From Octopus bimaculoides (lineage: Eukaryota): DNA of 41,801 nt. Below, in pieces: positions 2,825 to 36,412 of this stretch (position 1 is its first letter; each line of letters starts with the position of its first letter). The stretch covers positions 91,725,637 through 91,767,437 of the forward strand of contig NC_068988.1 of NCBI RefSeq assembly GCF_001194135.2, read 5' to 3'. A program made the translations under genes and the position numbers. The notes under the pieces are model-generated. The model was not told the origin of the DNA. It did no database searches and worked only from the letters and a program-made list of their open reading frames with translations.

Positions 2825-3495
2825 TAAGATCATTGGGGTTGGGTAGAGAAGACGGTGAAGAGGAGTAGACGACGGTGAGGGTGATGGGGTAGAAAAGACA
2901 ATGATGACCGAGGGGGTATAGTGGACAAAGGTGAAATGGGTTCGGCGGATAATGAGATGCATCGGAGTAGTTTGGACAAAGAGGTGAAGTTAGTAAGGTG
3001 GCATAGAAATGATGTAGTATGGCTGAGTGGAGTATGGTGCGGAGGTGGAGGGTGAACAGTGAGGTGGATGGGATAGAATGGACATTGCGGTGTGGTGGGG
3101 GTAGAGTGGACACTGAGGTGTGGTGGGGGTAGAGTGGACACTGAGGTGTGGTGGGGTGTAGTGGACAATGACGTGTGGTAGGTATAGTGGATACTGAGAT
3201 GAGTTGAAGTAGAGTGGACATAGAGGTGTGGTGGGGTACAGTGGACACTGGGGTGTGGTGGGGGTGGAGAATATACTGAAGTGTGGGAGGCAGAGTGGTG
3301 ATTGAGATGTGGTGGGGTAGAGTGGACATAGAGGTGTAGGGGTAGAGTGGACATTGAGGTATGGTGAAGTAAATGGACACTGAGCTATGATGGGGGTAGA
3401 GGGAACATTAGGTGTGGTGGGGTAGAATGGACATAAAGATTTAATGAGGGTAGAGAGGACGTTGAAATGTGGGGGTAGTTTGGACATTGAGATGA
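2825..3495. repeat. G-rich minisatellite, 27-28 bp unit (GGTGTGGTGGGGTAGAGTGGACACTGA)
   Basis: More than 20 degenerate tandem copies; source of the Pro/His/Thr-rich minus-strand ORFs. Confidence 0.92.
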
Positions 3496-3996
3496 GTTAG
3501 AGCACAATAGCCAAAACTGCACACGTGACTAAAAATGATGGAACTAAAATGTCAGCAGTTGTATTAGTCCTACTGAAACCTAGATTCGTGCTGTATGTGT
3601 GTGTGTGTGGAGGGGGGTGCGTGTGTGCGTGCGTGTATCAATAAATAGTAATCGGAGTGATGACTTAAATGAAGAACTTAAGAATGAAACATACGAACGT
3701 GTTCTGCGTGAAAAGCTAATGATAAGTCTGTGTTAACATTTTTATTGTAGTCAACCAAGAAATTATAATCAATACAGCCGTGACGACGAGAAAGAATCAT
3801 TAGTTTAATTCTGGTCAGGAAAAGCAAACATTGTGAAACAGAAGAAGAGAAATACTCACGTAGACGGTATTGAAGTGGTGTGTGTCTCTTTCGTTTGATT
3901 GGGAGCCAGTTTTGTACAGCACAGCATTACCAGCTGTCACTCGTGAGCAATCATTGCTTGATAATAAGTACTATAAATAAATATTAGCGACAGAGG

Positions 3997-4433
3997 CAGT
4001 ATTAATACCGAGAGGTAATATTTATGTACATTTAAACGTGGGTGTTCGGTTAGAACAAAGTATACTGCAGCAGATTCCATGAGAGAAACTCTCATATTGG
4101 CTTTTGGTGCAAAATGCACTCTTGCTTAGATCGCTAACGGGGAGATAAGTTTCCGTCACCTCCAGCGCAGAGGCCATCAGATCACATGATTTCGACCTTC
4201 CTTGGTGTTGTCAGTGATGGACGCTCGACCGGTAGAGATAGTAGCGACTCATCTCCCCGTCAGTGATAGAAAGACAGTACCACAACAGGCGCTGGTATCG
4301 CGATTCGCCTGTGAGCTTGTTAAAAAATATGCATTAGCACAAAGTCAGTATTAATACCGAGAGGTAATATTTGTCCCCCACTTAAACGTGGATGTTCTGT
4401 TAGAACAAACTACACTGTGGTAGATACCATGAG
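3997..4433. repeat. Pair of ~87-bp direct repeats (3997-4083, 4346-4433), period 349 bp
   Basis: Both begin CAGTATTAATACCGAGAGGTAATATTT and share TTAAACGTGG..GTT..GTTAGAACAAA...CCATGAG. Confidence 0.9.
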
Positions 4434-4599: not shown

Positions 4600-4752
4600 C
4601 GCCAGCAGGAGGCTGGTACTCATTTACAACAGAGTAGACTGAAGCAGTTTTAAATGAAGTGCCTTGTACAAAGACACCACACATTACTAGGTCTAGAAAT
4701 TGAACTTACGGCCCTATGATCATGAGACGAATACCCAGCCGCTAGGTCACAT
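4600..4752 (-). mobile_element. Decayed tRNA-derived SINE (family D-like)
   Basis: Minus strand shows a tRNA-like head with GTTCAATT B-box-like motif, then the TTGTACAAGGCACTT...CAGTCTACTCTGTTGTAAATGAGTACC body. Confidence 0.6.
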
Positions 4753-6240: not shown

Positions 6241-7278
6241 ATATATATATATAAATAAATATATATATATATANNNNNNNNNNNNNNNNNNNNNNNNNNN
6301 NNNNNNNNNNNNNNNNNNNNNNNNNNNNNNNNNNNNNNNNNNNNNNNNNNNNNNNNNNNNNNNNNNNNNNNNNNNNNNNNNNNNNNNNNNNNNNNNNNNN
6401 NNNNNNNNNNNNNNNNNNNNNNNNNNNNNNNNNNNNNNNNNNNNNNNNNNNNNNNNNNNNNNNNNNNNNNNNNNNNNNNNNNNNNNNNNNNNNNNNNNNN
6501 NNNNNNNNNNNNNNNNNNNNNNNNNNNNNNNNNNNNNNNNNNNNNNNNNNNNNNNNNNNNNNNNNNNNNNNNNNNNNNNNNNNNNNNNNNNNNNNNNNNN
6601 NNNNNNNNNNNNNNNNNNNNNNNNNNNNNNNNNNNNNNNNNNNNNNNNNNNNNNNNNNNNNNNNNNNNNNNNNNNNNNNNNNNNNNNNNNNNNNNNNNNN
6701 NNNNNNNNNNNNNNNNNNNNNNNNNNNNNNNNNNNNNNNNNNNNNNNNNNNNNNNNNNNNNNNNNNNNNNNNNNNNNNNNNNNNNNNNNNNNNNNNNNNN
6801 NNNNNNNNNNNNNNNNNNNNNNTATATATATATATATATGGGGATAAACAAATTAGACACATCGAATATATTAAATATATTAAATACATCAACTACAAAA
6901 TATATATATGTGTGTATATATGCTCCATCTTTGAACTTCACTGCATTAAGATCTGAAATGTAAGACCTTCTCTACCCTAATGACGGAGGCTCGTCTCATC
7001 CTATGTTATATGCATCCATACGGCCACAAATTGTGATGAACGAAATATACTAACATTATTATAGATTACCGAACCCCCAGAAACAGCTATTGGACTTATA
7101 ACACCTTTCTTCTATCCCTTTAACTTTCTCTGCCGTTTGTACTCTGTGTAAGTGGGACCTATTAATATATATATCTATATATTTATGCACAAAAATTCAT
7201 CATCTGAAATTTTCCACATTTTTGCTTTCTCTTGTTTTGCATATATACTTAAATACATATGTCGTATTTGATATATTT

Positions 7279-7475
7279 GAGCTGGCAGAAACGTTAGCAC
7301 GCCGCGCGAAATGCTTTGCGGTATTTCGTCTGTCTTTATGTTCTGAGTTCAAATTTCGCCGAGGTCGGCTTTTTCTTTCATCTTTTCGGGGTTGATACCA
7401 GTTGCGTTCTGGAGTTGAGCTAATCGGCTGGTCCCCTTCCCAAAAATTTCGGACTTTGTGCCTCGAGTAGAAAAG
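7279..7475 (+). mobile_element. SINE family A
   Basis: GAGCTGGCAGAAACGTTAGCACGCC...TTCTGAGTTCAAATT...GTGCCTCGAGTAGAAAAG. Confidence 0.92.
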
Positions 7476-7751
7476 CATATTTGATGTGTTTAATTTTTCT
7501 TATCCTCATAATTGCTTCTACACGCGTTCAACTTGATCCCTTTTTACCTTGTGGAATGATTTCCCGTAAAGACATCGGAGTCCAAGTTTGAGCACTATTG
7601 TCTTCTATACAGAGAATATCTTGATCTCTGTCTTGTTTTCCATTTGTGTCTTTCGTTGTTCGAAAAAATAGTTCATATTCCATGTACTCGTATTTCGTAT
7701 TTTTTTGGTGTACACGTTTCATGACGTCCTGTACTCGATCTTCCACAGTTT

Positions 7752-7895
7752 TCATCTACCTAATCCACTCACAAAGCATTGGTCAGTACGGGGCCATAGT
7801 AGAATAGACTTGCTGAAGGTACCATGCAGTGGAACGGAACCTGATGTCACGAGGTTGCAAAGTGAGCATGTTAACCACACGGCCATACCACGGAC
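7752..7895 (-). mobile_element. SINE family B 5' half (decayed)
   Basis: CTACCTAATCCACTCACAAAGCATTGGTC...GCAGTGGAACGGAACCTG matches the reverse of family B. Confidence 0.8.
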
Positions 7896-8351
7896 ATATC
7901 TATTGTTTTTAAATTTTATCTGAGATAACCCTTGTTCTTATATTCCGAAGACCCAGAATCAATCACCATACGACATACGCTATACCTGATTCTAAAAACC
8001 ATATTTCGATCCTGTAGAAATTCAATGACATTATCTAGATAAATGTTATTCATTCCAGCTTTTTGTAATTCCAAAAACCTAGAATCCAAGTTAGATGGAA
8101 CTTACCCCCGAATGTTACAGAGTAGACTTACCGAATGACCAGTCCGTGTTTTCTTTGTATCGTCTATCTGGATGTTTTGTCCCTTTCTTGTATCACCTAA
8201 CTGTCTTGATGTTTTGCGTTCTTGTCCCATTCTGTATTATTTATACATACATACATACATACATACATACATACACATACATACACACACGCACATGCAT
8301 ACATACATACATAAATACAAACGTATCTTGGAGAACTCATCCCACCTAGAA

Positions 8352-8862
8352 ATAGCAGTACGGAGGTCTCTTGTCTGTTTCCACCATTATAAGAGAAAGG
8401 CGCATGCGCTTTGAGGGGCGTTGCTGGCGAACTAAACAAGAGCTGGCAAGTGACCTACTTTTATGGGTCCCAAGACATGGCTATACTCAAGCTGATCGTC
8501 CGAACACAACGTATGTAGCTCAACTCACCAGTGTTACTGGCATGATCATAGCTAAGTGGATGCACTGGATGGCCCTTCCCCCTTACTATTCAATGGTACA
8601 TCCTCGGATTTACAGTGATACTTTTATTTCGAAACTCCACTTTAGCTTTATAACAAATTAGAGCCCACTCAGAATATTCTGAAGCACCCACACGGGCACC
8701 AAAGTCCGGCGACGGGCCCGGACACTGGATGCCTCCTCGAAGACTTCCCTCAACTAATGCAGGACCGACATGTATGGTGTGTGCAGACTCGACCAGATGA
8801 TGATGATGATGATGAAGATGATGAAGATGATGATGACGACGACGACGACGATGATGAGGATG
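8352..8862 (+). mobile_element. RTE-clade LINE 3' ends (two pieces) with (GAT/GAC)n tail
   Basis: IRERRMRFEGRCWRTKQELASDLLLWVPRHG...RPNTTYVAQL (8371-8545) and HPHGHQ...DTGCLLEDFPQLMQDRHVW (8685-8780) are RTE ORF2 C-terminal motifs; trinucleotide tail at 8797-8862. Confidence 0.8.
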
Positions 8863-8934
8863 TTATTCATTACACCCCTGCCGGAGTCTAACACTCACGT
8901 TGAAGGGTTTCGAATTAGCACTATTTACTTGAAC

Positions 8935-9200
8935 ATAGACCTTTGGACATTCCTATATGGACTTCACGGCAACCAGAAGTTGCCTATGAATCCTAAACTC
9001 CTGCAAAACCCATCACAACATGTCCCGCAGCATGTGGCCGTATGCCTTTTCGTGGTTTACAAAGTAGGCGTACAGCTCTTGGTAATATTCCCAGGATTTC
9101 ACGAAGACCTGCCGTAGACTGAATATTTGATCGGTTGTGCTGCGTTGAGGACTCAATGGAGGAGATACTTGAAGATTCTACCCCCAACAACTCTCCCAGG
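8935..9200 (-). mobile_element. RTE-like reverse transcriptase fragment (decayed)
   Basis: A minus frame not in the ORF track reads RSTTDQIFSLRQVFVKSWEYYQELYAYFVNHEKAYGHMLRDML*WVLQEFRIHRQLLVAVKSI, matching RT subdomains 2-3 (STTDQIF..RQ..EK; FVDLEKAYD). Confidence 0.8.
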
Positions 9201-9515
9201 AATAGTGGGCGGAACAGGTAAGTAAATGTATTCATTAGCAACTTCAAATTCAGAGGCGAGAGGAATTTGCGTTTATCGAACTAAGAAGAAAGAAGGAAAT
9301 TATTCGACAATGAGCGCATTAACGAACGGAAGTGTGCTATATGAGAGCGGAAGTAGCCAACCAAAATTAGTTTCACTTTCTCCGTATTGATTAAGGCCCA
9401 ACCATTATCTAAAATGTATCCCTTAAGTTGTTATTGTTGTTGTTGTTGCTGTTGTTGTTGATGATGATGATGATGTCGACGACAATGATGACAGTGAAGT
9501 TAGTAAAGATTTGGG

Positions 9516-9802
9516 GGTACTACTAAAGCAGCGCGGACCCGAACGCGCAGTCGCGCGTCCGCGCTAGCTAGTCGTGAGTGGTCGATCCTAACCCTAACCC
9601 TATTCCTAACTCTAACCCTAACCCTAAACACGTATTCATTTGCACACGCGGGTTAGGGATAGGGTTAGGGTTAGGGATAGGGTTAGGGTTAGGGTTAGGG
9701 TTAGGGTTAGGGATAGGGTTAGGATCGACCACTCAAGACTAGCTAGCGCGGACGCGTGACTGCGCGACTGCGCGTTCGGGTCCGCGCTGCTTTAGTAGTA
9801 CC
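9516..9802. mobile_element. 287-bp palindromic MITE with telomeric-repeat TIRs and 8-bp TSD (Merlin-like)
   Basis: Arms 9516-9586 and 9724-9802 are inverted copies apart from an 8-bp indel and one mismatch, and continue inward as (CCCTAA)n 9587-9627 and (TTAGGG)n 9650-9723. Termini GGTAC...GTACC; TSD GATTTGGG at 9508-9515 and 9803-9810. Confidence 0.9.
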
Positions 9803-9808
9803 GATTTG

Positions 9809-10018
9809 GGATCTTTTTGGTTTGACGGGCAACATTTTTTTATGTAGTGTTTTTTGTACCGAAACACTTTCAAACTTCGTATACTTGTATATTTTGTGGT
9901 ATAGAACAGATAAAAATTCTTGTATTCGAAGTTATTTCACGTTAAAAATTGTCTTATTTCGATAATTTGAACCAATCGCTTAAGAAAACAAGTGTTGCCC
10001 GTCAAACCAAAAAGACCC
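9809..10018. mobile_element. Internally deleted copy of the GGATC-TIR element family (Merlin-like), reverse orientation to 20062-20777
   Basis: TIRs GGATCTTTTTGGTTTGACGGGCAACA and TGTTGCCCGTCAAACCAAAAAGACCC; the arms match 20062-20777; TSD AAGATTTG at 9506-9513 and 10019-10026. Confidence 0.88.
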
Positions 10019-10212
10019 AAGATTTGTTTATCCTCAGGTCAACTTTGATCGTGCAGACCTCTGATCAAAGGCGTTTGCAGCAACGACCGACCCAGTGTTT
10101 TTTAATCGTATATAGGACAGTATTATCTAGCGTATATTTCACTTTCTCGTGACGGTAAGCTGTGATTTATTGTTCGTGCTACTATTTATAGCAGGTTGAG
10201 CGTTAAATAATA

Positions 10213-10315
10213 AAACCTGTATCAGTAGCCTGTCTGGAGGTGTAGGAGTTGTTGTTTAGCCCCAGGCCAACCGTAATCGAGGAAATCTGTGATGGAAAAC
10301 ATTCCAGCTGTGGCT
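10213..10315 (+). repeat. Short interspersed repeat (family G); related pieces at 10032-10080 and 6005-6062
   Basis: Shared motif TTGTTTAGCC..AGG.CAAC..T.ATCG.G.A.A.CT.TGAT.AAA...ATTCCAGC in three places. Confidence 0.55.
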
Positions 10316-11652
10316 ATTCTGACACTTATCTATACTTTCAAACATTAATGCATCTAGGGCTAAACTATTCAATAATTTGTTTTAAAAAAAAAGCAACAGA
10401 AATTTTAAGATAGTACCGCGTGATTTGTGAGAGATTTGACTGCTATTTCTAGCAGAACGAGCGACCTTGTAGCGACTCTGATTAGATATATATATATATA
10501 TATATGTTTACACACAATAACATCTGTGACAGTGAATGAAACTGCGATGGCAAGGAATTTGTTATTCATTGTCCTGCATTTACGGTTATCAAATAACTTA
10601 GCTTGGATTGTTTGGTAGTAAATATAGGAAAGGGTTAGATAGAGCGAGAGAGATGAAGTGAAAGAAAGAGAGAGAGAAAGAGAGAGGCAAAGAAAAAAAG
10701 TCAGTGAGAAAAAGAGAATGAGAAAGATATTTTATTATTATGACGGAGTGAGAGAGAGAGAGAAAGAGGTGGTGTTTGCAGGCTTTTAATGGGAGTCCAT
10801 ACATTCACACGTCTNNNNNNNNNNNNNNNNNNNNNNNNNNNNNNNNNNNNNNNNNNNNNNNNNNNNNNNNNNNNNNNNNNNNNNNNNNNNNNNNNNNNNN
10901 NNNNNNNNNNNNNNNNNNNNNNNNNNNNNNNNNNNNNNNNNNNNNNNNNNNNNNNNNNNNNNNNNNNNNNNNNNNNNNNNNNNNNNNNNNNNNNNNNNNN
11001 NNNNNNNNNNNNNNNNNNNNNNNNNNNNNNNNNNNNNNNNNNNNNNNNNNNNNNNNNNNNNNNNNNNNNNNNNNNNNNNNNNNNNNNNNNNNNNNNNNNN
11101 NNNNNNNNNNNNNNNNNNNNNNNNNNNNNNNNNNNNNNNNNNNNNNNNNNNNNNNNNNNNNNNNNNNNNNNNNNNNNNNNNNNNNNNNNNNNNNNNNNNN
11201 NNNNNNNNNNNNNNNNNNNNNNNNNNNNNNNNNNNNNNNNNNNNNNNNNNNNNNNNNNNNNNNNNNNNNNNNNNNNNNNNNNNNNNNNNNNNNNNNNNNN
11301 NNNNNNNNNNNNNNNNNNNCTCTCTCTCTCTCTCTCTCCCTCCGTCTCTCTCTCTCTCGTCCTTCTCGGGTGAGTCAATAGCTGTGAATTCTGAAGCTGA
11401 CATCACAGATGTACCAGAGCCGTGATGTCTTAACACATGACCTGTACACGTGATCAGATAGGTGTTCTATTTATTCAAATACTTTTGTTTCCTGATTGCT
11501 TACCTGCCTCATTGTTAAAAACAGGTAAATAACGTGTACAAATAAAACTTGTTTACTTCCTCATCTAATGCAAAAACAAAACAATCCACTGGAGATCGCT
11601 GTCACCAAAAATTGAGGACATGAAATTCTGGTAAAAGAAACAACAGCTACAC

Positions 11653-12142
11653 TGTGGCCATGCTGGAGCACTGCTTTGAAGAAATTTCAGTCGAATTAAT
11701 CGACACCAATACTCATTATTTTTTCAAGCCCTAATACTTATTCTATCGGTCTCTTATGCCGAACCGCTATGTTGCGGGGACGTAAACACACCAGCACCGG
11801 TTGTCACTTGGTGGTGGTGGTGGTGGAGGACAAACATACTCACAATGACATACACGCACACATACACATACACACATAGATACATATGTGTATCTTATGT
11901 GCTTCTTTCAGTTTCCATCTACCAAACCCACTCACAAGGCTTTGGTTAGCCCGAGGCTATATAGTATAGGACACAAGAACACTAGAACACTTGCCCAAGA
12001 TGCAACGCGNNNNNNNNNNGAGGCTATATAGTATAGGACACAAGAACACTAGAACACTTGCCCAAGATGCAACGCGGTGGGACTGAACCTGGAACCATGT
12101 GGTTGGAAAGTAAACTTCTTACCACACAACTACACCTGCACC
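11653..12142 (-). mobile_element. Full-length composite SINE (family B head, central CA/TA repeat, family C tail)
   Basis: GGCCATGCTGGAGCAC...CCGAACCGCTA...GTAAACACACCAGCACCGGTTGTC...CTACCAAACCCACTCACAAGGC...GGGACTGAACC...ACCACACA; the tRNA-like head is at the right end on the minus strand. Confidence 0.92.
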
Positions 12143-13367: not shown

Positions 13368-16309
13368 CCAATTGAATGGCCCGGCGTTGCCCGGGCTACT
13401 GGTATCCTTGTTCAGATTAATAAACAATAAATATAAAGATATATTCTCATAATTATTTCATGTGTAATTTTTTGTTGGTGTTGAAATGAATGAATTGTTG
13501 TCACTTCCAACTCGCGAGCAAGTAACATAGAGTTGGCCGTGGGAGACGCATGTAGTAGAGAGATCAAGTGCAACTACCAAGAGAGATTGACTCTGAGGTT
13601 TGCTAATTGAAATACATGGAAACTGAAGCGTCTTAAATTCAAATGGAACGTCTGTAGGTATGAGAGGAATTTTTGGAATAAAGATATTTCCTCCTTTGTG
13701 ACTACGTGTTATGATTGCTGCCTGTGGGACATGAGGCTTCATGGAAGTAACAATTAAGCGAGTTCCATTACACAGGTGAGATGGGTCAAGGTTCCTAAGC
13801 AACATTACTGGAGCACCCAGATTTAGTGTCAAGTTATGCGGTGGCATCCCACCGGGTTCAAATGTGTTCAGAAATTCAATAGAGTATTGAACAACCTGAT
13901 CTTGATCGACTGTTGTCAGTTGATCGAAAAGTAATTTCTGACGTATCTGTTAACTTTTGAAGAAGTTCATGATTGAGTTTATCAACCATTTCATTAGTTG
14001 GAGCTAGTATAGCTGTTTCACATAACCAGTTTACATCAATGTAATTGACAGATAAATTAGGAAATACTTCCCTAGGAGAAAGTAGCATTTGATCGCATGT
14101 AATTTTATGTAGCTGAAGTCTTGAGTTGAATGTTAATATCCTATTACTAATATTAAGAAGCTCGTATGATCACCTTGTAGAAGTACTGTGATGTTTCTTG
14201 TAAGATGAAGTTTTTTCACTCGTCTCCAAAAGTACAATTTTTTAATTTTTTAATTTTTTAAAGCATGCATTGACCTCATCAGCTTTTGATCCTTTGGAAT
14301 AACTGGCAACATTTGACGAAAATCTTCTGCAAGAAGAATTGTTAGTCCTCCCATGAGCGTGCTATTGGTTTTCTTTTCTTGGAGGGTACGGTCAAGTTCC
14401 TCTGGAGCTCCACGATGTGACAGGGCACTCATCCCAAACAATGAGACAAGTTTGTTGGAGAACTGTTTCCATTGCAGAGTTTTGGGAAATGTTGCACATT
14501 TGAGATTCTTTCATTGCAAGGTTTAGAGGGAGCTTAAATATGGAATGAGCAGTTCTTCCCCCATTGAGGAGGGTAGCTGCAATACCAGAAGATGCAACAC
14601 TGGAAGAATAGATTTTATTTCCTCCCATTTAGGATTGCAGGTGAAAGTGACAAAAAGATCTGGTTTTCCACATGTCATAGTATCTTGTGTTCGTTCGTGC
14701 ATATATCGAAGACCACATGTGAATGATGGTGGGAGGATCATAAGTTGCCCCATGTTTTGAATATCACCCTCTGTCCTCAGAGCATCTTGGAGATGAACAT
14801 AATTTTTAGCCCTTAACTTTTTTTGATTGTTACGAATATAGAGGAGACGCTAACTCTCAATTTTAGTATACATATCAACCAGGTATTGTTGAAATAGATC
14901 ACGATACATGTATAACTGATTTGATTGTTCTGGTCTTAACATCAGATGGCAATAATAGAAGTCATTTGACGACACCTTTTTGTTTGTAATTGGCTCTCTT
15001 GTTGCAGGTTCATTCTGTGGAATATTGAAATGATACCCATCTTGCCCATTCCATACAATAAGAGGACACTGAAGAGCATCATAAGAGGATGAGTCTCTGA
15101 AACACGAATGAGAATATCACGATTTTCATGGGGATCACCTACCATAAGGATAGCTACTGCATTAGATGTGGGCTCATTAAAACGGCGTAAAATGTCCTTT
15201 GCTATAGTTTACTATAGACGTAACGAACGCGGAAGCACACACGCTCACAGACACATACACACTCATTAGAATTGATGAATACTGAAAGCAACAAAACGCA
15301 CACACGAAGTTCAAACGAAACGAAACGTTGTAAATATAGGTGCAAAACATACTTTCTGTAGCAAAGTTATGCTATAAGAAATTTTTTTAGGGAATATTTT
15401 CAAAAGAAATATTTCAGCGTCGGAAAGTCACAAATTTAGCAGATATTTCTATGCGTCACCAATGTAACAAAGTACAGAAAATCAACATTTATTTGGAACA
15501 TGTACTAAATGTTATAAAATTCAAGATTGAATGTCACGTTGAAGAAAGTCAAGTGCCAAGAAAATTCAGAAGGCATAATTCAATTTTTCATACAAAAAAA
15601 TTTTACAGTTTTTAAATGAACGCTGAATAAAAGTGTGAACAAGGGATATGTTGCTGTTGTGAACGTTAATTAATTTAAAACATTTGCTGAAGGATGTATG
15701 TAGCAAGACATAAATTAATTTGACATCACTTAATATATATTTTAACTGAGTAAGGTTAGGGGTGTAGAATAAATACTGACTAACACAGTAAAAAGGTTAC
15801 GCGGCGTTGAATACTAACATTGTTAAAGCAGCATAGCAGGAATACGATAAGGACGCTAGGACTGTTAAAAAAGCATTATCTTCAAACTGGTTATAAGAAC
15901 TGGAATAACATTTCTGGGATTACTTTGAAAGAGCCGCTAAGGCTTTCTACTTCGCCAGGTTTCCGAATTTGTTATAATAACCAGAATAGCATTTTTTTTT
16001 TCAGATATATTTGCGAGTGTTGTGAATGCTGTCAAATCATCCAAATCTTCATGTTGGTTATAAAAACCAGGATAAAATTTCAGCACATAAGTAGTGATAA
16101 TCGTTAATGCTGTTTAAACCGCAACTCTCCATAAGAAAAGGAAAATCCAAACAGTGGTACTTCAACGTCCAGGCCACAACTAAACAAAACCCTTTCAAAA
16201 TCGGCGCGTTTCACTGTTGGGTGGTACAGTCACATACATATACTAAGACAGACACACACAGACATACATTCACGCACACCTCAGGCCTATCTCTGTCCTT
16301 TTGTGTGTT

Positions 16310-19149: not shown

Positions 19150-19436
19150 CATGGTTCTTCATGCAGGAACATAAGATACTGTGGGATTTTTCAATCCAAT
19201 GTGACTCCCTAATTGAGGCTCGGAAACCAGATATTGTTGTGGTAAACAAAGGAAGAAAGGAAACCAAGATCTTAGATATTGCAATACCTGTAGATGCACG
19301 CATAAATGGTAAACTATAAAGGCTTGAAAAGTACAGACTACTAAAAGATGAAAACTGCAAGAATGTAGACTATGTTATTCCAGTATTTGTAGGAGCAGTC
19401 GGAGCACTAACCACCAAGTTCGAGAAATATGTCAAA
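19150..19436 (+). mobile_element. R4/Dong-like non-LTR retrotransposon, REL endonuclease fragment
   Basis: EHKILWDFSIQCDSLIEARKPDIVVVNKGRKETKILDIAIPVD...EKYRLLKDE; closely similar in DNA to 22240-22520. Confidence 0.9.
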
Positions 19437-20061
19437 TTTTCGCAAATCATATATGGTTTCTTACATTTTGCAATAAAGCACAAGTTGTAAGTATATTTTT
19501 AACCAGCGTATGTCTTTCAGAAAATAGTGTTCCTACTTTCAAAGATTTCAGGAACTTCTTGTAAAAGTATAGTAAAGATTTGCCCTGCATAGGAAGTATG
19601 TCTAGTATCAACATGCTTCTTTTTTTTTTTTAGCAAACTTCATACTTATTCTCATCGAATATTCATTACAAATTTAGCAGGCTGGACGATGCTCTTCCTA
19701 AGAGCACCGTCCATACCAATGAGAGGAGAAAGCAAATCAATAACGTAAAAACAAAAGAAAAAAGAAAGATTTATCGCATAGTTTCTGTTTAATATGGAAC
19801 TGCTCAGCTTCAAGCTTCATTCATTTTCCAGTTCATGTTACGGCATCCAGGATTCTGTTGGAATTTCTGCATTGTTTTGGTTATTAACAGTGAAAGAAGA
19901 AAAAGCTTAGCCAAGATGAATTTATTTATAAGTTTTAAATTGTATAATAAATTTTAAATTAAGCATTTAAAAATGTTGTTTTATCACATTTATTAATTTC
20001 ATGAATTTATTTATTTCAGCATAATGCTATTCTGGAAAATGGACAGAATTACATAAATATT

Positions 20062-20777
20062 GGATCTTTGGGGTTTGACGGGCAACATTTGTTTTCTTAA
20101 CGAAACACTTCCAAACTTGGGACACTGGTAGAATGTGTCATATAAAACAACTTCTTCTCTTAACCTTCTTAACAAAAAATTGTACATCGCAAGTTATTTC
20201 ATGTTAAAGTTGTCGTATTTCTGTAATTTTAACCAATCACTGACGTCTATTCAGCTGAATACAGTTACTGCTGTTCGGTGTCAAGTGTGTTATTCCCTGT
20301 TTAATTATATCATTATTCCCTAGTAAGGGTTTAGGGTTTTAGGGTTAGGGTTCGGGTTTTAGGGTTAGGGTTAGGGTTTTAGGGTTAGGGTTGGGGTTAG
20401 GGNNNNNNNNNNNNNNNNNNNNNNNNNNNNNNNNNNNNNNNNNTAACCCTAAAACCCTAATGCTAAAACCAGTACAAACGCACGAACGATGTCATAAATA
20501 AGAGTAACACGGGTAGTTGTTGACAAACAACGGGACTAATTTTATTCAAGGGAAAAGATCCCATGACACCGTTACGGCATTAATTGTTTTCACCTCAATA
20601 GACGTCAGTGATTGGTTGAAATTACCGAAATACGACAATTTTTTACATAAAATAACTTCGAATACAAAATTTTTTATCTGTTCTATACCACAAAATATAC
20701 AAATATTCGAAGTTTGAAAGTGTTTCGGTACCAAAACACTACATAAAAAAATGTTGCCCGTCAAACCCCAAAGATCC
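20062..20777. mobile_element. 716-bp non-autonomous DNA element with long imperfect TIRs, 8-bp TSD and a central telomeric array (Merlin-like)
   Basis: Terminal GGATCTTTGGGGTTTGACGGGCAACATTT is perfectly inverted at 20749-20777; arm similarity runs ~190 bp; TSD TAAATATT at 20054-20061 and 20778-20785. Confidence 0.92.
20324..20460. repeat. Interstitial telomere-like repeats, (T2-4AGGG)n then N gap then (CCCTAA/CCCTAAAA)n
   Basis: Direct reading; the junction is hidden in the 41-N gap 20403-20443. Confidence 0.93.
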
Positions 20778-21984
20778 TAAATATTTGCTGATTGTATGAG
20801 TAAAATTATAGAGGTCAAAATTAAATAATCTCAACGAATACAGATGATAGCTTCACGGTTCATAGCTTATCTATATTTCTGGGGCGAAAATTTATAATCA
20901 AGGTCGAAAACTAACGTCGCATTAATACTGTTCACACAGGTAAATCAACATAAATCATGCTATACTTACGAAAGTAAAAAGCGATAACAAAATATATTCT
21001 TAAAATTGTATGTAAATATTCGGTTGCACAACCAACAAAGGTTTTTTTAACAATATATGTTAGAGACGTCAGATATCGCTCACTGTATAAAAATAAAAGT
21101 ATGGAATGAAAACTGAACAAAAACAAAATAAGGATAGTCTGTCTACTTGTTCTGTTCAATATCAATTTTTTTTTTCCACTAGGCAAACTTTATTGCATGC
21201 ATTTTTCTTTCTTTGTGCTGATAAAATACCTTTATAAACAAAGCAAATATAAATTTTAGATTCCTCTATGACAGTTCCGTAATCCCAAATAATCTTTATG
21301 CGACCCCACTCCCCAATTTAGGAACTGCTGTAATTAAGCTAACTCCCTTTCAAACAGGTATTGCGCATTTACATTTTTTTCTCTGTCAACTTAACCTATA
21401 TATAGCCAGTAGTATTACACTTTGTTGACAGACAGGGCTGTAACACAAGTTAAATATATATATGAGTGTATCAACATATCTGATATTAGTACAAGCAACA
21501 GATAAATTAGATGTGTTTTTCATTTAAGAAAACATTGTTTCTTACTCTAACGTTTTTCCATGCATTGTGTCAAGTATCACAGTACTTCACTTGTTTAGGA
21601 ACAAACTATAAAAGGCATGCATCTGTTTGGTTTACTAGCATCGTAGCTATTGTATCCAGAAGAAATACAAATATCACGGTAGTTTTTTAAAACTGACAAC
21701 GAAAACAGTGTCAGTATAACAGTGAAGTTTGGCTGGCTGGTATTGAGTAAATCCTTCAGAAATTAGAGATGATGCTATATTCAATTAACCTGGTGGAAAC
21801 CGTCACCAGCAACTGGAAGCCATTGCTATCTCCGATGTCACCGTTTAAGGTCGATGAAATAAGTATTAGTTGAACTCTAGGTTCAATAATCAACTGCCTC
21901 CTGCCTCCCAAATTTCAGGCTTTGTGCAGGTCGTTCGGCAAAAGCTGAACGCTCATACGTTGTTTTCGTCGGGAGAGTCCATCG

Positions 21985-22660
21985 TCATTATCATCATTTT
22001 TATTACTGTTGCTTTTACTCCTCAGGAAGTTCGGTCATGATTGTTCTGGTAGATTCTGTAAGAGCAGACAGCAGCTTGCCGTCAGATGTCTCACAGGGTC
22101 TCTTTCCGCACATTATAAGCTTTGCTACTTGGTTGTTAATTATCGTGGGAGGCATTCGACATCCAAGTACCAATCTCAAAATCTAACCGTCCCCAGCAGA
22201 GTAGTTTTTTGGGCTTGCTCTACTCTCATGTCAATTCCGACTTCTTTGACATATTTCTCGAACTTGGTGGTTAGTGCTCCGAGTCCTCCTACAAATACTG
22301 GAATGACATAGTCTACATTCTTGCAATTTCGTCTTTTAGTAGTCTGCACTTTTCAATCCTTTCTAGTTTGCCATTTATGCATGCATCTCCAGGAATTGCA
22401 ATATCTATGATCTTGGTTTCCTTTCTTCCTTTGTCTACCACAACAATATCTGGTCTCCGAGCCTCGATTAGGGAGTCACATTGGATTGGAAAATCCCACA
22501 GTATCTTATGTTCCTCGTTCTCAGTGACTACTTCTGGTTCATGTTCGTACTATTTCCGTGCTCTGTTCAGGTCGTACTTTTCACACAGCTTCCTGTGGAC
22601 GAACTTAGCTACGTTATCGTGCCTCCTTTTGTAATGCATTTGAGCCAGCTTGCTAACTCA
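21985..22660 (-). mobile_element. R4/Dong-like retrotransposon, 5'-truncated 3' end
   Basis: Minus: YKRRHDNVAKFVHRKLC...EHKILWDFPIQCDSLIEARRPDIVVV...DIAIPGDA...VIPVFVGGLGALT...QKTTLLGT, then 3' UTR and a (GAT/AAT)-type tail. Confidence 0.92.
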
Positions 22661-23037: not shown

Positions 23038-24445
23038 TTTGATTCTCGCGGCACTATTTGCGGTTGTTCTTTACATGAAAGCAGGCAATAGCAAATCACC
23101 AAATGTTTCAAGTAGTGTCTTCTCCTGTGACTCAAAAAGACAATACTCTCCTTAGAATGTGACCTGTACCCAACAATGCTATCTTTTGGATCACCTCAAG
23201 CCTAACAGCAGCCCCAATATTCTTAATATGTTTTTCAAGGCTCTTGGAAACTGCTCCCAATGCTCCAATTACCACCGGTATCACCATTACTTTCCACATG
23301 CTCCATAGCTATTTTTTTATCTCGTCCTGCAGTGGCTGGTATTTCTCATTCTTTTCTGTTTCTTTACATTTCAGCCTCGAATCGCCTAGTATTGCAACAT
23401 CTGTTATCTTTGTTTCTTTTTCATTTTTATGGATGATCACTATATCTGGCCGTCTCGCCTCTATGACTTGGTCGCACTCTATGTTAAAATTCCAGAGTAT
23501 TTTGTAATGTTCGTTGTCCATTATTCCCTCTGGCTTGTGTTCATACCATTGTTCGGCTCTCTCGAGGTTTGCTTTACCGCACAACAGCCAGTGGACATAT
23601 CTGGCCACATTGTTGTGTCTCCTTTTGTGTTCGCGTTGTGCGAGCTTACAGCACTCACTAACAATATGGCTTATACTTTTTCCCTTCTCAGAGCACATCC
23701 TACACTGTGGCGAGCCAGTGCTTTATCAATGTGATATTTAGAGTGGTTTGTTCTGAGAGCTTGTTCTTGGGCGCTGCACTTTAATGCATCAGTGGGCCCT
23801 TTTAAGTCTCCTTTCTGTAGCCATTGTCAGGTTCTATTCCAATCAATCTCATCTTTATTCTTCAAGAATTGACCGTGCATTTTCTTGTCCTGACAAATTT
23901 TCTTCATCTGTCTTTTCTGGTCTTTCTTAAATAGTGCTAGATCTACGGCTTCGTTCACTTTTAAGGTTCCCTGCATTTTCACTGCTTCAATCATTTCTTC
24001 TTTACTCCCCTTGACATACCAAGCCAGGCTATTTTCTTCCCTTACACAATCTTCACAACACACCAATCCCCGTCCTCCTTCTTTCCTCTTTGCATACAGT
24101 CTTGACACATCACTCTTGGGGTGTAGTTCCTTGTTCATTGTTATTAATTTACGTGTTCTCCGGTCTATCTCTTGTAACTCATTCTTCTTCCAATATACTA
24201 TTCCTGCCCCATATCTTATCAAAGCAGCCGCCCACGTGTTAATTGTTCTAATCTTAGAGCAGTCATTTAGCTTCGATTGGAGCACAAGCCGACTTCTCCT
24301 CAAATACTCTTTCCTGTACATTTCTTTCATCTTGTGTCCATTCATCTTATCTCTTTCAATGACACCCAGGTACTTATATCCTTCTTCTCCGACTTCCTTT
24401 ATAGTTTCGCCACTTTCCCGCTTCTCAGTGAATAGAAACCTAAAA
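23038..24445 (-). mobile_element. R4/Dong-like retrotransposon, 5'-truncated (RT end, thumb, CCHC, REL)
   Basis: GEEGYKYLG, INTWAAALIRYGAGIVYW, LHPKSDVSRLY..RKEGGRGL, C..K..SISHIVSEC (zinc knuckle), ARRPDIVII...DVAILGD...EKYQPLQDE, PVVIGALG...LLGTGHILRRVL*; (AAC)n(AAT)n tail at 23006-23040. Confidence 0.96.
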
Positions 24446-24806
24446 TATATGCTCTAACGGAGACATGACAACCTAGTTTCCGTTAAAGGCACTAATACAC
24501 ATTCGCTACACATATGAAAGATAGTATTGTACTTCACCCTCATATGACACGAACACACAAGTAGGACTTTCATCAAAGTCACTACAAATACTAGACACCA
24601 AAATCTTAATGATCCCCCACAGTGGCCCCCACCAGATGTATGTATGTACGTATGTATGTACGTATGTATGTACGTATGTATGTATGCCATTATTCAGAAC
24701 ATTTCAAAATTTCTTGCTAATAGAGCAAGATCTGATTTCATTGGAATTTCAACAACATCAACAGGATATTTTTGCAAGTATGGGTGTATATGTGCAGTCA
24801 ATGCAC

Positions 24807-24890
24807 GTGCAGGTCTGTATGTTTTGTTTTATGTATGCATATTTATGCGTGTAATTGCATGCCTAGACATGCGCATATATACCTGAACTT
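24807..24890 (-). mobile_element. 3'-UTR remnant of the (CATA)n-embedded REL family
   Basis: GTGCAGGTCTGTATGTTTTGTTTTATGTATG...CTAGACATGCGCATATA aligns by eye with GTGCAGATTTGTAAGATTTGCTTTATGTATG...CTAGACATGCACATATA at 32828-32910. Confidence 0.65.
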
Positions 24891-24920
24891 ATGTATGTAT
24901 ATATGTATGTATGTATGTAG

Positions 24921-25506
24921 CATGTTAGAAGAAGTCGCGGTGGCTGTCTTAAGGATGAATAATTGGAGGTCTCCGGGTATGGATGACATTCATGCAGAGT
25001 CGTTGCAGCATGGTGGTGAGAAACTTCTGCAGCAACTTCACTCCTTGTTTGGCAGGATATGGCGTAGTGAATTTGTACCTGAGGACTGGAGAGATACAGT
25101 AATGGTGGTCTTATATAAGGGAAAGGGTAACAGGAATGACTGTGGTAACTACAGGGGAATATCATTGCTTTCTGTCGTAGGAAAGGTTCTATGCAGGGTA
25201 CTTCTAGACCGTCTGCTGAAACACGTTGCAGATTGTGTTCTTCCAGAAAGTCAATCTGGCTGTCGTGTGGGACGCGGCACTGCTGTTGTGATCTTTTCAG
25301 CTAGACAGCTTCAGGAAAAGTGTGTGGAACAGGGTCTCGATTTATATCAGGTTTTTGTCGATCTGACAAAGGCCTTTGATACAGTTAACAGAAAAGCACT
25401 ATGGAAGATCCTCCAGAAACTTAGTTGTCCTGAAAAGTTCCTTGCTGTGGTTAGGTCTTTTCATGAAGACATGAAGGGTAGAGTTAATGTTAGAGGTAAA
25501 AAAAAA
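24921..25506 (+). mobile_element. Internal RTE/BovB-like RT fragment, open frame, between (TATG)n tracts
   Basis: LEEVAVAV..M..WRSPGMDDIHAE...NYRGISLLSVVGKVL...LPESQSG...QLQEKC...FVDLTKAFDTVNR; ~190 codons without a stop, ending in A9. Confidence 0.95.
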
Positions 25507-25624
25507 TGTCGTGTATGTATGTATGTGTGTATGTATGTATGTGTGTATGTATGTATGTGTGTATGTATGTATGTATGTATGTATGTATGTATGTATGTAT
25601 GTATGTATAAATATATATAGCATT

Positions 25625-34149: not shown

Positions 34150-36412
34150 TGAATAAAGTGATGAAAGTGACTTCGTGAAGCCACGACCGCTGCCGCCGAG
34201 GCGATGATCGACTTTGTCCGGAAAAAGGACCAAGACCGGTTTGACGAGTATGATAAAACCATCTCCAGTCTTATCGAACCCAAACTCCGGACGCGCCTGT
34301 CCCATGCCACTGCGGAGAACAAACGAAAACACCAGCAAGCATCAGGGGAATGCTAGCGAGGAATTCGCGAAGTTCCTAACATCTGGTGACAGAGGAAAGC
34401 AAAGGAGTTGCAAAACTATGCGCACCAACGAGACTTGCGGCCCCATAAGGTCATCAGTGGGCGGCCTGGAGAACGCAGCTGGCTCTACTATAACCGACAC
34501 TCAGGGAATCCTCCTTCGCTGGAAGTCCCATTTCAAGGGCCTACTTAACGACCACTCAAGCACTCCTGACGATCTCCTCCAAAACACCCCACAGCTCCCC
34601 ATCCGCCATTGGATGTCCCTGCTGCCCTCACACCATGAGTTCAACAAGGCACTTGCGCGCATGAAGCCGGGGAAAGCTCCAGGACCAGACAACATTCCGT
34701 TTGAGTCTTTCACGTACGGAGGTCTTGAGCTGAGAAATCATCTGATATTCCTTATCCTCAAGATCTGGGAAAGCAAGACCCCCAACGAACGACTTCTGCG
34801 ATGCAACTATCATCAGCATCTACAAGAAAGGAGACCTAGAGGATTGCAACATCTATCGGGGCATCTCACTTTTGAGTATTGCAAGTAAGATCTTCGCCCG
34901 TATCCTACTCAATCGCTTTCACATCCTCGTGGAAGACGTACTCCCTGAGTCACAGTATGGCTTTCGACCCTCTCGAGGCACAATCAACATGATCTTTTAT
35001 GCCCGTCAACACCAGGAGAAGTGTCAGGAACAACAAAGCCTGCAATGTTCATCTTCTGGGATCTAAAGAAAGCCTTTGACAAGGTCCTCTGTCCTGCAAT
35101 GTGGGCCGTCCTTGACCGGTTTGGATGTCCGGGGGACTTCATTGCCCTGGTCCGCTCCCTTCACGATGACATGGTGGGTCGGGTATGCCATCAAAATGCC
35201 CTCACAGACCCGTTTCCCATCACTGGGGGTATTAAGCAAGGATGCGTCCTGGCACCAACCTGTTTCTCTTTGCACATGACCGCTATGTTCAACGAAATCA
35301 CACTAGACTCGCCTTCCATCAGCATGCGCTATCGCTTGGATGGCGGACTCTTCAATCTCGCACGTCTCCGTGCAAAGACGAGGACCTCCGTTATCTCAAT
35401 CCGTGAGATGCAGTACGCCGACGACAATGCCACTCCGATCCGGACCGCAGATGGTCTACAAAGGACGGCCGATCTTTACAACGCGACTTACGAACGCTTC
35501 GGGATGCAGGTAAACACATTAAAGACCAAGACACTGATCCAACCTGCACCAGGCCAGAACAGTCCACCCACAAACATTAAAATCAACGGCCAACCCCTAA
35601 AAGTTGAATACTTCACATACCTTAGAAATATCCTTTCGAAGACCCCCCACGCGTGAAAGGGACGTAAAGAACCGGATTGGGGCTGCCCACTCCGCCTTCG
35701 GCAATCTCAGCCAACTTGTATTCTTCAATCATGCGCTGACCATCCGGACAAAGATCATGGTCTTCTGTGTCATTGTCCTGTCAACTCTACTCTACGCTTG
35801 TGAGACTTGGATGTTGTTCTGCCGTGATTTCAAGCGCCTTGAATGCTTCCAACAATCGAAGCTACGACAGATCCTCAACATACAATGAGCAGATCACGTT
35901 ACCAACAACGAGGTTCTTCGCCGCGCCTCACTACCAAGTGTCGAAGCCACCATTCTACGCCATTGTCTCCGCTGGGTGGGTCACGTCCAGCGTATGGAGC
36001 CCTCTCATCTCCCAAGGATCGTGCTCTACGGAGAACTTGCAATCGGAAGAAGACCCAGAGGAGGTCCGAAATTCCGTTTTAAAGACCAGCTCAAACGGAC
36101 CTTGGCTCAAGTTAACATCCAGCCATCCTCATGGGAATAGATTGGCATGGACAGGACAGCCTGGAGGACTGCTACCCGCAATGGAGCCAGCTCCTTCGAG
36201 CAGAACAGACAACAGAATGGGGAGGCGAAGCGCAGAAGAAAGGAACGTTTTCAGCATCCTTGACCTGCACTGACCATCCCATGCGAGTTCTACCCACGAC
36301 TCTTTCACCACCGACTTGGACTCAAAAGTCACTTTCGACACAAACATCAGCCGAGGAGACTGGATGGAAACTGACGAATCCAATGCTCGGATACGAGCTG
36401 GAGCCGACACGC
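34150..36412 (+). mobile_element. RTE/BovB-like LINE, 5'-truncated, frameshifted
   Basis: RKKDQDRFDE; MKPGKAPGPDNIP; DCNIYRGI; LPESQYGFRPSRGT; DLKKAFDKV; GIKQGCVLAPT; MQYADD; TLLYACETW; RLRWVGHV.RM; C-terminal R...SH..H. No APE domain remains; at least 4 frameshifts. Confidence 0.96.

What the first reader, a model, noticed from the sequence alone, without database searches (positions are those of the whole stretch)
9506..10026. One 8-bp-TSD element inserted 2 bp inside the terminus of another; order reconstructable
Seen: removing 9516-9802 plus one GATTTGGG restores AAGATTTG|GGATC...GACCC|AAGATTTG, a GGATC-family element with its own perfect TSD. The younger MITE's TSD is therefore 6 bp of the older TSD plus the older element's terminal GG. 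Inference: either chance, or a preference of this transposase class for pre-existing transposon ends, such as end-bound transpososomes or local hopping between cross-mobilised families.
Basis: partly seen in the sequence, partly recalled or inferred. Interest (0 to 1): 0.7.

Follow-up and report, generated by a model that had tools for sequence, protein, structure and literature searches.

The report
Nested Merlin-type MITEs in an octopus genome
A small non-coding transposon landed across the very edge of an older one, and the order of the two events can be read from the duplicated target bases; it is an ordinary nested insertion, and one case cannot show any preference for transposon ends.

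Summary
Element A (9516-9802, 287 bp, GGTAC...GTACC, 41-bp perfect inverted ends) is flanked by the perfect 8-bp duplication GATTTGGG. Removing A and one duplicate restores element B1 (210 bp, GGATC...GACCC) flanked by AAGATTTG. A's duplication is 6 bp of host flank plus B1's terminal GG, so B1 came first and A arrived later at this locus.

Both elements fit the Merlin (IS1595-like DDE) superfamily: terminal GG plus 8-bp duplications. A's first 75 bp are 79% identical to the ends of an Octopus sinensis element that encodes a DDE_Tnp_IS1595 transposase. B has two more copies with perfect 8-bp duplications. A B-like end also lies downstream of an 82%-identical Merlin transposase gene in O. bimaculoides. 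The window is most likely octopus.

The proposed preference for transposon ends is untested. I found only one A copy and could not search any octopus genome by DNA. Under a uniform null, about 0.07% of sites straddle a B-family end. About 1-3% straddle the end of some repeat in a genome that is 45% repeats. Chance is therefore sufficient. Interest is low.

The parts
9506..9513 (.). Left target-site duplication of the older element B1 (AAGATTTG)
   Evidence: It is identical to 10019-10026 (D9).
9514..9515 (.). Original terminal GG of B1, now separated from the rest of B1 by A
   Evidence: It is part of A's left duplication. B family termini are GG in three copies.
9508..9515 (.). Left target-site duplication of the younger element A (GATTTGGG): 6 bp of host flank plus B1's GG
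   Evidence: It is identical to 9803-9810.
9516..9802 (.). Element A, a 287-bp Merlin-derived hairpin-like MITE (GGTAC...GTACC)
   Evidence: Its 41-nt inverted ends are perfect, followed by 84-nt arms that are 93% complementary. The DNA fold is -137 kcal/mol, z = -23. The first 75 bp are 79% identical to the ends of the Merlin element L009:9415-11751.
9587..9627 (.). CCCTAA-type telomere-like array in A's left arm
9650..9723 (.). TTAGGG-type telomere-like array in A's right arm (18-bp higher-order unit)
9803..9810 (.). Right target-site duplication of A (GATTTGGG); its last GG regenerates B1's terminus
9809..10018 (.). Element B1, 210 bp, with complete inverted ends (GGATC.../GGGTC...). It is an internal-deletion derivative of a B2/B3-type element.
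   Evidence: B1 positions 1-172 match the reverse complement of B2's right arm at 91%. B1 positions 172-210 match the reverse complement of B2's left end at 90%. Alignment.
10019..10026 (.). Right target-site duplication of B1 (AAGATTTG)
   Evidence: D9
20062..20777 (.). Element B2, a longer copy of the B family (716 bp including a 41-N assembly gap). It is flanked by a perfect TAAATATT duplication at 20054-20061 and 20778-20785.
   Evidence: It is 95-97% identical to B3 in L008.

Best explanation
Two non-autonomous transposons of the Merlin superfamily (IS1595-like DDE transposase) sit one inside the edge of the other in what is most likely an octopus genome. B1 is a 210-bp deletion derivative of a roughly 710-bp B-family element. 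It integrated first and duplicated AAGATTTG. Later, a Merlin transposase supplied in trans integrated the 287-bp hairpin-like MITE A by ordinary cut-and-paste, with an 8-bp staggered cut over GATTTGGG. That target straddled B1's left boundary: 6 bp of host flank plus B1's terminal GG. Gap repair duplicated those 8 bp, so B1 keeps a complete inverted end at 9809 and an orphan GG remains at 9514-9515. Shown: the anatomy, the order of events, that A inserted at this locus, and the Merlin affiliation of A. Inferred: trans-mobilisation, and that the position at B1's end is coincidental rather than targeted.
For: The duplications and inverted ends are perfect at the stated coordinates. B boundaries are confirmed in three copies with different 8-bp duplications. 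Merlin is defined by terminal 5'-GG plus 8- or 9-bp duplications (PMC8101967). That paper reports O. bimaculoides as unusually Merlin-rich, with 191 sequences. A's arms align with both ends of L009:9415-11751, which carries a PF12762 DDE_Tnp_IS1595 gene. A B-like subterminal stretch of 59 bp (88-91% identical) plus a GGATC end lies at L008:4505-4602. It sits next to a subterminal motif shared with the L009 element and downstream of a transposase 82% identical to L009's. Chance estimate: 28 of 38,254 possible 8-bp targets in the window (0.07%) straddle a B-family end. With 45% repeats (PMC9115989) and assumed mean fragment lengths of 200-1000 bp, 0.6-3% of random targets straddle the end of some repeat.
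Against: The single A copy seen sits on a B-family end, which has a prior of about 0.07-0.2% under a uniform null within this window. Both elements are Merlin-type and appear tied to closely related transposases, so a shared mechanism is conceivable. The target also lies in a 17-bp palindrome, AAAGAT-TTGGG-ATCTTT, formed by host flank and B1's end. Either point could mean the site was favoured rather than random. No reads or second assembly were available to confirm the junctions.
Confidence: 0.78

Rival explanations
1. Sequence- or shape-driven target choice. The junction of host flank and B1's inverted end happened to form a favourable, partly palindromic target (AAAGAT-TTGGG-ATCTTT), and A's transposase chose it for that reason, not because it was a transposon end.
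For: The 6+6 palindrome around the target is visible in the reconstructed pre-insertion sequence. Palindromic target motifs are documented for other DDE transposons such as the P element (PMC2577343, listed).
Against: The 8-bp duplication is not centred on the palindrome; it is offset by about 1.5 bp. The five Merlin-type duplications seen (GATTTGGG, AAGATTTG, TAAATATT, TAACGTTG, CAAAAGAG) show no clear consensus. A 6-bp inverted repeat near a site is only mildly improbable once spacings and offsets are allowed, roughly 1-2% by my own estimate made after the fact.
Confidence: 0.1
2. End-directed targeting. A Merlin transposase bound at B1's inverted end, or a transposase complex assembled on it, tethered the incoming A complex, so that integration occurred at the end. 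This would resemble the way IS30 and IS911 target their own inverted repeats, or local hopping between related families.
For: Both elements are Merlin-type. Transposases 82% identical are linked to A-like ends (L009) and to a B-like end (L008). The only A copy seen lies on a B end, at a prior of 0.07-0.2%. A precedent for end targeting exists in bacteria (PMC9333248).
Against: The sample is a single case chosen after the fact. The inverted ends of A and B differ at about 16 of 24 positions. B2 and B3 have clean ends with nothing inserted nearby. The other nested Merlin-type event seen, C in the L009 transposase gene, is far from any end. IS30 end targeting makes end-to-end junctions rather than a normal target duplication, whereas a normal 8-bp duplication is present here.
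Confidence: 0.07
3. Assembly artefact. The palindromic, telomere-repeat-bearing element A was wrongly joined to the B1 end in a gap-rich short-read draft.
For: The window has nine N runs. A is a near-perfect hairpin with low-complexity arrays, and such sequence is prone to misassembly.
Against: A misjoin would not create a perfect 8-bp duplication that includes 2 bp of B1 and leaves B1's own duplication restorable. The junctions lie in unique sequence inside a gap-free block, 6823-10814. A's ends are homologous to real Merlin ends in another species.
Confidence: 0.03

Closest known systems
Merlin superfamily DNA transposons and their non-autonomous derivatives (Feschotte 2004, as summarised in PMC8101967)
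   Same: Both have terminal 5'-GG inverted ends and 8-bp target duplications. A's ends are homologous to those of an element encoding a DDE_Tnp_IS1595 transposase. The host clade, octopus, is already reported as Merlin-rich.
   Different: A and B encode nothing. A is almost entirely a hairpin built from one Merlin end duplicated in inverted orientation. Both carry internal telomere-like hexamer arrays, which I did not find described in the papers I searched.
Nested MITE insertions ('MITE multimers') used to infer insertion order and preference in maize and rice (Jiang and Wessler 2001, recalled from my own knowledge; nesting statistics for MULEs in PMC3903597)
   Same: A younger element with an intact duplication lies inside an older one, and removing it restores the older element and its duplication.
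   Different: Here the insertion straddles the very terminus, 2 bp inside. The host is an animal (a cephalopod), and the superfamily is Merlin rather than Tourist or Stowaway.
IS30 / IS911 targeting of their own inverted repeats (PMC9333248)
   Different: Those are bacterial copy-out-paste-in elements that target their own ends and form end-to-end junctions. Here the ends are heterologous and there is a normal 8-bp duplication, as in any ordinary integration.
hAT superfamily MITEs
   Same: They also make 8-bp target duplications.
   Different: hAT ends typically begin YARNG (my own knowledge). A and B begin GGTAC and GGATC, and A's ends match a Merlin element, not a hAT element.

Membership tests
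Merlin superfamily (non-autonomous member) | Inverted ends that begin with 5'-GG | tested here: met
   A reads GGTAC at both ends. B1 reads GGATC and GGGTC, and B2 and B3 read GGATC at both ends. The criterion comes from PMC8101967.
Merlin superfamily (non-autonomous member) | Target-site duplication of 8 or 9 bp | tested here: met
   A has GATTTGGG. The B copies have AAGATTTG, TAAATATT and TAACGTTG. All are perfect 8-mers.
Merlin superfamily (non-autonomous member) | Terminal sequence homology to an element encoding a DDE_Tnp_IS1595 transposase (element A) | tested here: met
   A positions 1-75 match L009 9415-9490 at 79% (E = 6e-12). Both L009 ends align with both A arms. The gene at L009:10001-10711 matches PF12762.
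Merlin superfamily (non-autonomous member) | Terminal sequence homology to an element encoding a DDE_Tnp_IS1595 transposase (element B) | tested here: inconclusive
   L008 4505-4602 carries a B-like subterminal stretch (88-91% over 59 bp) and a diverged GGATC end. It lies downstream of a PF12762 gene and next to a Merlin subterminal motif. No matching left end or duplication was found, so a separate B fragment lying next to the gene is not excluded.
MITE (miniature inverted-repeat transposable element) | Short, non-coding, with inverted ends and a target duplication, present in many copies | tested here: inconclusive
   Size, lack of coding capacity, ends and duplications fit. Copy number is the open point. 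B has three copies in about 50 kb of sequence. A has one copy only, and no octopus genome could be searched by DNA.
hAT superfamily | 8-bp duplication together with YARNG termini and a hAT transposase partner | tested here: not met
   The duplication length fits. The termini are GGTAC and GGATC, and A's partner is a Merlin element.
End-targeting transposition (IS30/IS911 type) | Integration next to an end of the same element family, forming an end-to-end junction, seen recurrently | tested here: not met
   The ends are heterologous (about 8 of 24 identical) and a normal 8-bp duplication is present. It is a single event. B2 and B3 ends are unoccupied. The definition comes from PMC9333248. Recurrence genome-wide could not be tested.

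The most novel reading that the evidence does not exclude
Octopus Merlin transposases preferentially integrate at or across the termini of resident Merlin-type elements. This would be end-directed target choice by a eukaryotic cut-and-paste transposase, mediated by transposase bound at the resident end. It would build clusters of Merlin MITEs and leave the resident element's end intact.
Probability: 0.06. Interest if true: 0.6.

Novelty: new member of a known kind. Interest (0 to 1): 0.2.

Why it matters
As it stands, the finding gives a clean relative dating of two Merlin-type MITE families and ties both to Merlin transposons in octopus, a clade already reported as Merlin-rich. That is useful for repeat annotation but not surprising. 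It would matter only if genome-wide mapping showed that Merlin MITEs seek out transposon ends. Such a result would be an unusual target-choice mechanism for a eukaryotic cut-and-paste transposase, with a bacterial precedent in IS30. The telomere-like arrays inside several unrelated hairpin elements are a separate small curiosity about how these MITEs arose.

Tried and rejected
1. Exact-pattern scans for A and B ends in viral, metagenome and prokaryotic genome collections all returned nothing. These collections evidently hold no DNA of this species carrying these elements.

2. I tried to fish A copies through the protein index, using a concatenation of A's six-frame ORF pieces as the query. It gave no real hit.

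3. I looked up window ORFs as recorded genes to find the source record or allelic contigs that might carry the empty site. Three tries found nothing on record.

4. Loci fetched through reverse-transcriptase relatives (L001-L007) hold no A or B sequence.

5. hAT classification was rejected on the terminal sequence and on A's homology to Merlin ends.

6. The order 'A first, then B' was rejected because B's flanks would then not match.

7. I considered a composite A+B moving as one unit. This was rejected because the outer flanks (GATTTGGG and AAGATTTG) are not a duplication, and A's duplication contains locus-specific host bases.

8. I searched L008 for a left end and duplication partner of the B-like end and found none.

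9. Inverted-repeat scans of L010-L012 were swamped by microsatellites and gave nothing usable.

Full report
**Observation.**
- Element A spans 9516-9802 (287 bp). It starts GGTAC and ends GTACC.
- Its outer 41 nt are perfectly complementary, followed by 84-nt arms that are 93% complementary.
- As single-stranded DNA, A folds into one long hairpin (-137 kcal/mol against -46 for shuffles, z = -23).
- A is flanked by GATTTGGG at 9508-9515 and at 9803-9810.
- Joining 9515 to 9811 restores a 210-bp element, B1. Its ends are GGATCTTTTTGGTTTGACGGGCAAC and GGGTC..., matching at 24 of 25 positions. B1 is flanked by AAGATTTG at 9506-9513 and at 10019-10026.
- Neither end sequence occurs in shuffled windows.
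- A de novo scan for GG-ended inverted repeats with 8-bp duplications, run over the window and 12 fetched loci, returned only four real elements and nothing spurious.

**Order of events.**
- A's duplication consists of 6 bp of host flank (GATTTG) plus B1's terminal GG. A therefore integrated at this locus after B1 was already there.
- The reverse order fails. The 8 bp left of B would then have to equal its right flank, but they read CCGATTTG and AAGATTTG.
- B's boundaries are independently fixed by two more copies:
  - B2 in the window (20062-20777, duplication TAAATATT);
  - B3 in an O. bimaculoides contig (L008 5575-6284, duplication TAACGTTG).
- Because the staggered cut duplicated the GG, B1 still has a complete end at 9809, and an orphan GG remains at 9514-9515.
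- B1 is an internal-deletion derivative of a B2/B3-type element of about 710 bp.

**Host organism.**
- The window is a gap-rich draft (nine N runs). It is full of microsatellites, reverse-transcriptase fragments and a Pif1/Helitron-like fragment.
- The best named relative of one reverse-transcriptase ORF is from Octopus vulgaris, at 79% identity.
- B2 is 95-97% identical to B3 in O. bimaculoides.
- The window is therefore most likely from O. bimaculoides or a close relative.

**What the elements are.**
- Merlin transposons are defined by ends beginning 5'-GG and by 8- or 9-bp duplications (PMC8101967). The same paper singles out O. bimaculoides as Merlin-rich, with 191 sequences.
- I took an O. 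bimaculoides Merlin protein from that paper's supplement and used it to fetch octopus loci.
- In O. sinensis, L009 holds a 2.3-kb element (9415-11751) with a DDE_Tnp_IS1595 gene. Its ends begin GGTACTATTTAAGAAG... and align with both arms of A over about 75 bp at 79% identity, up to the shared GCTAGCTAGTCGTGA.T.GTCGATCCTA.
- A is therefore a Merlin-derived MITE built from one Merlin end in inverted duplicate.
- For B the link is suggestive rather than proven:
  - In O. bimaculoides L008, a Merlin transposase gene (3223-4056) is 82% identical in protein to the L009 one.
  - It is followed by a subterminal motif shared with L009, and then by about 97 bp of B-like sequence ending in a GGATC-type terminus at 4602.
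  - I found no matching left end or duplication.

**Chance or preference.** I could not map other A copies.
- DNA scans of the available collections were empty.
- A protein-index trick failed.
- Window ORFs are not on record as genes.

Rough nulls are as follows.
- In the window itself, 28 of 38,254 possible 8-bp targets (0.07%) straddle a B-family end, and 0.2% lie within 10 bp of one.
- With 45% repeats in coleoid genomes (PMC9115989) and assumed fragment lengths of 200-1000 bp, 0.6-3% of random targets straddle the end of some repeat.

One case, picked after the fact from a scan of many windows, is thus what chance would deliver. Four further points bear on the question.
- The ends of B2 and B3 are unoccupied.
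- The only other nested Merlin-type event I saw lies far from any end. It is family C, inserted in the L009 transposase gene, with L008 as the empty site.
- The inverted ends of A and B share only about 8 of 24 positions, so direct cross-mobilisation is unlikely, even though related transposases may serve both families.
- The target sits in a 17-bp palindrome, AAAGAT-TTGGG-ATCTTT, formed by host flank and B1's end. This is a weak hint of sequence-driven choice. The duplication is off-centre, and the five duplications seen share no motif.

**Comparison with known systems.**
- Nested MITE insertions with reconstructable order are well known (plant 'MITE multimers', from my own knowledge; nesting statistics in PMC3903597).
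- End targeting exists for bacterial IS30 and IS911 (PMC9333248). It involves the element's own ends and forms end-to-end junctions. Here there is a normal duplication next to a heterologous end.

**Verdict.**
- Both elements can now be assigned to the Merlin superfamily: A firmly, B probably.
- The preference hypothesis is neither supported nor excluded, and chance is the best explanation.
- This is an ordinary nested insertion involving probably undescribed Merlin MITE families. Interest is low.

Noticed in passing
window 9587-9627 and 9650-9723; window 20326-20402 and 20444-20466; L008 5897-6022; L009 7390-7488: Telomere-like hexamer arrays (TTAGGG/CCCTAA and variants) sit at the centre of several unrelated hairpin-like elements: A, B2, B3 and another inverted-repeat element in L009. 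In A the C-rich array comes first and the G-rich array second. In B the order is reversed, as in a head-to-head telomere fusion. The origin is unexplained, and I found no description in the papers searched.
   Followed up: partly
L009 10779-11248 (empty site at L008 3996-4003): A third GG-ended MITE family, C, interrupts the Merlin transposase gene in O. sinensis. It is 470 bp with 44-bp perfect inverted ends (GGCGATGTTTCGC...) and the duplication CAAAAGAG/CAGAAGAG. The O. bimaculoides homologue shows the uninterrupted site. Related copies occur twice each in L010-L012.
   Followed up: partly
L008 3223-4602 versus L009 9415-11751: Two Merlin transposase genes that are 82% identical in protein are associated with different terminal sequences: A-like ends in L009 and a B-like 3' end in L008. 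They still share a subterminal motif, CTTTCACTTCTGACA.C.AA.GCATGA. This may reflect end replacement between Merlin lineages, or a B fragment abutting a truncated element.
   Followed up: partly
window 9504-9520 (pre-insertion sequence): A's target lies in a 17-bp palindrome, AAAGAT-TTGGG-ATCTTT, created by the host flank and B1's inverted end. It is not present at B2 or B3.
   Followed up: partly
window 20403-20443: A 41-N assembly gap lies in the middle of B2, between the two telomere-like arrays. The ungapped B3 copy in L008 shows what the region should contain.
   Followed up: yes
window 19165-19436 and 22245-22515: Inverted arms of about 270 bp (93-95% complementary) enclose roughly 2.8 kb that includes B2. 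ORFs in the arms resemble the one at 23309-23698, so these are probably inverted fragments of a retroelement.
   Followed up: no
window 6255-6839: The 'perfect 292-nt palindrome' reported by the repeat finder is an artefact of the N run at 6274-6822. The low-GC bins in the composition profile are likewise caused by N runs.
   Followed up: yes
window 13458-13847, 24772-25620, 34214-36273: There is a Pif1 2B-domain fragment (probably a Helitron remnant) and two reverse-transcriptase fragments (Pfam RVT_1). The window is mostly decayed mobile elements and microsatellites, and no host gene was recognised.
   Followed up: partly
window 3052-3433: A G-rich 27-bp tandem repeat (about 14 copies, 72% matches) produces the strong GC skew in that bin.
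   Followed up: no
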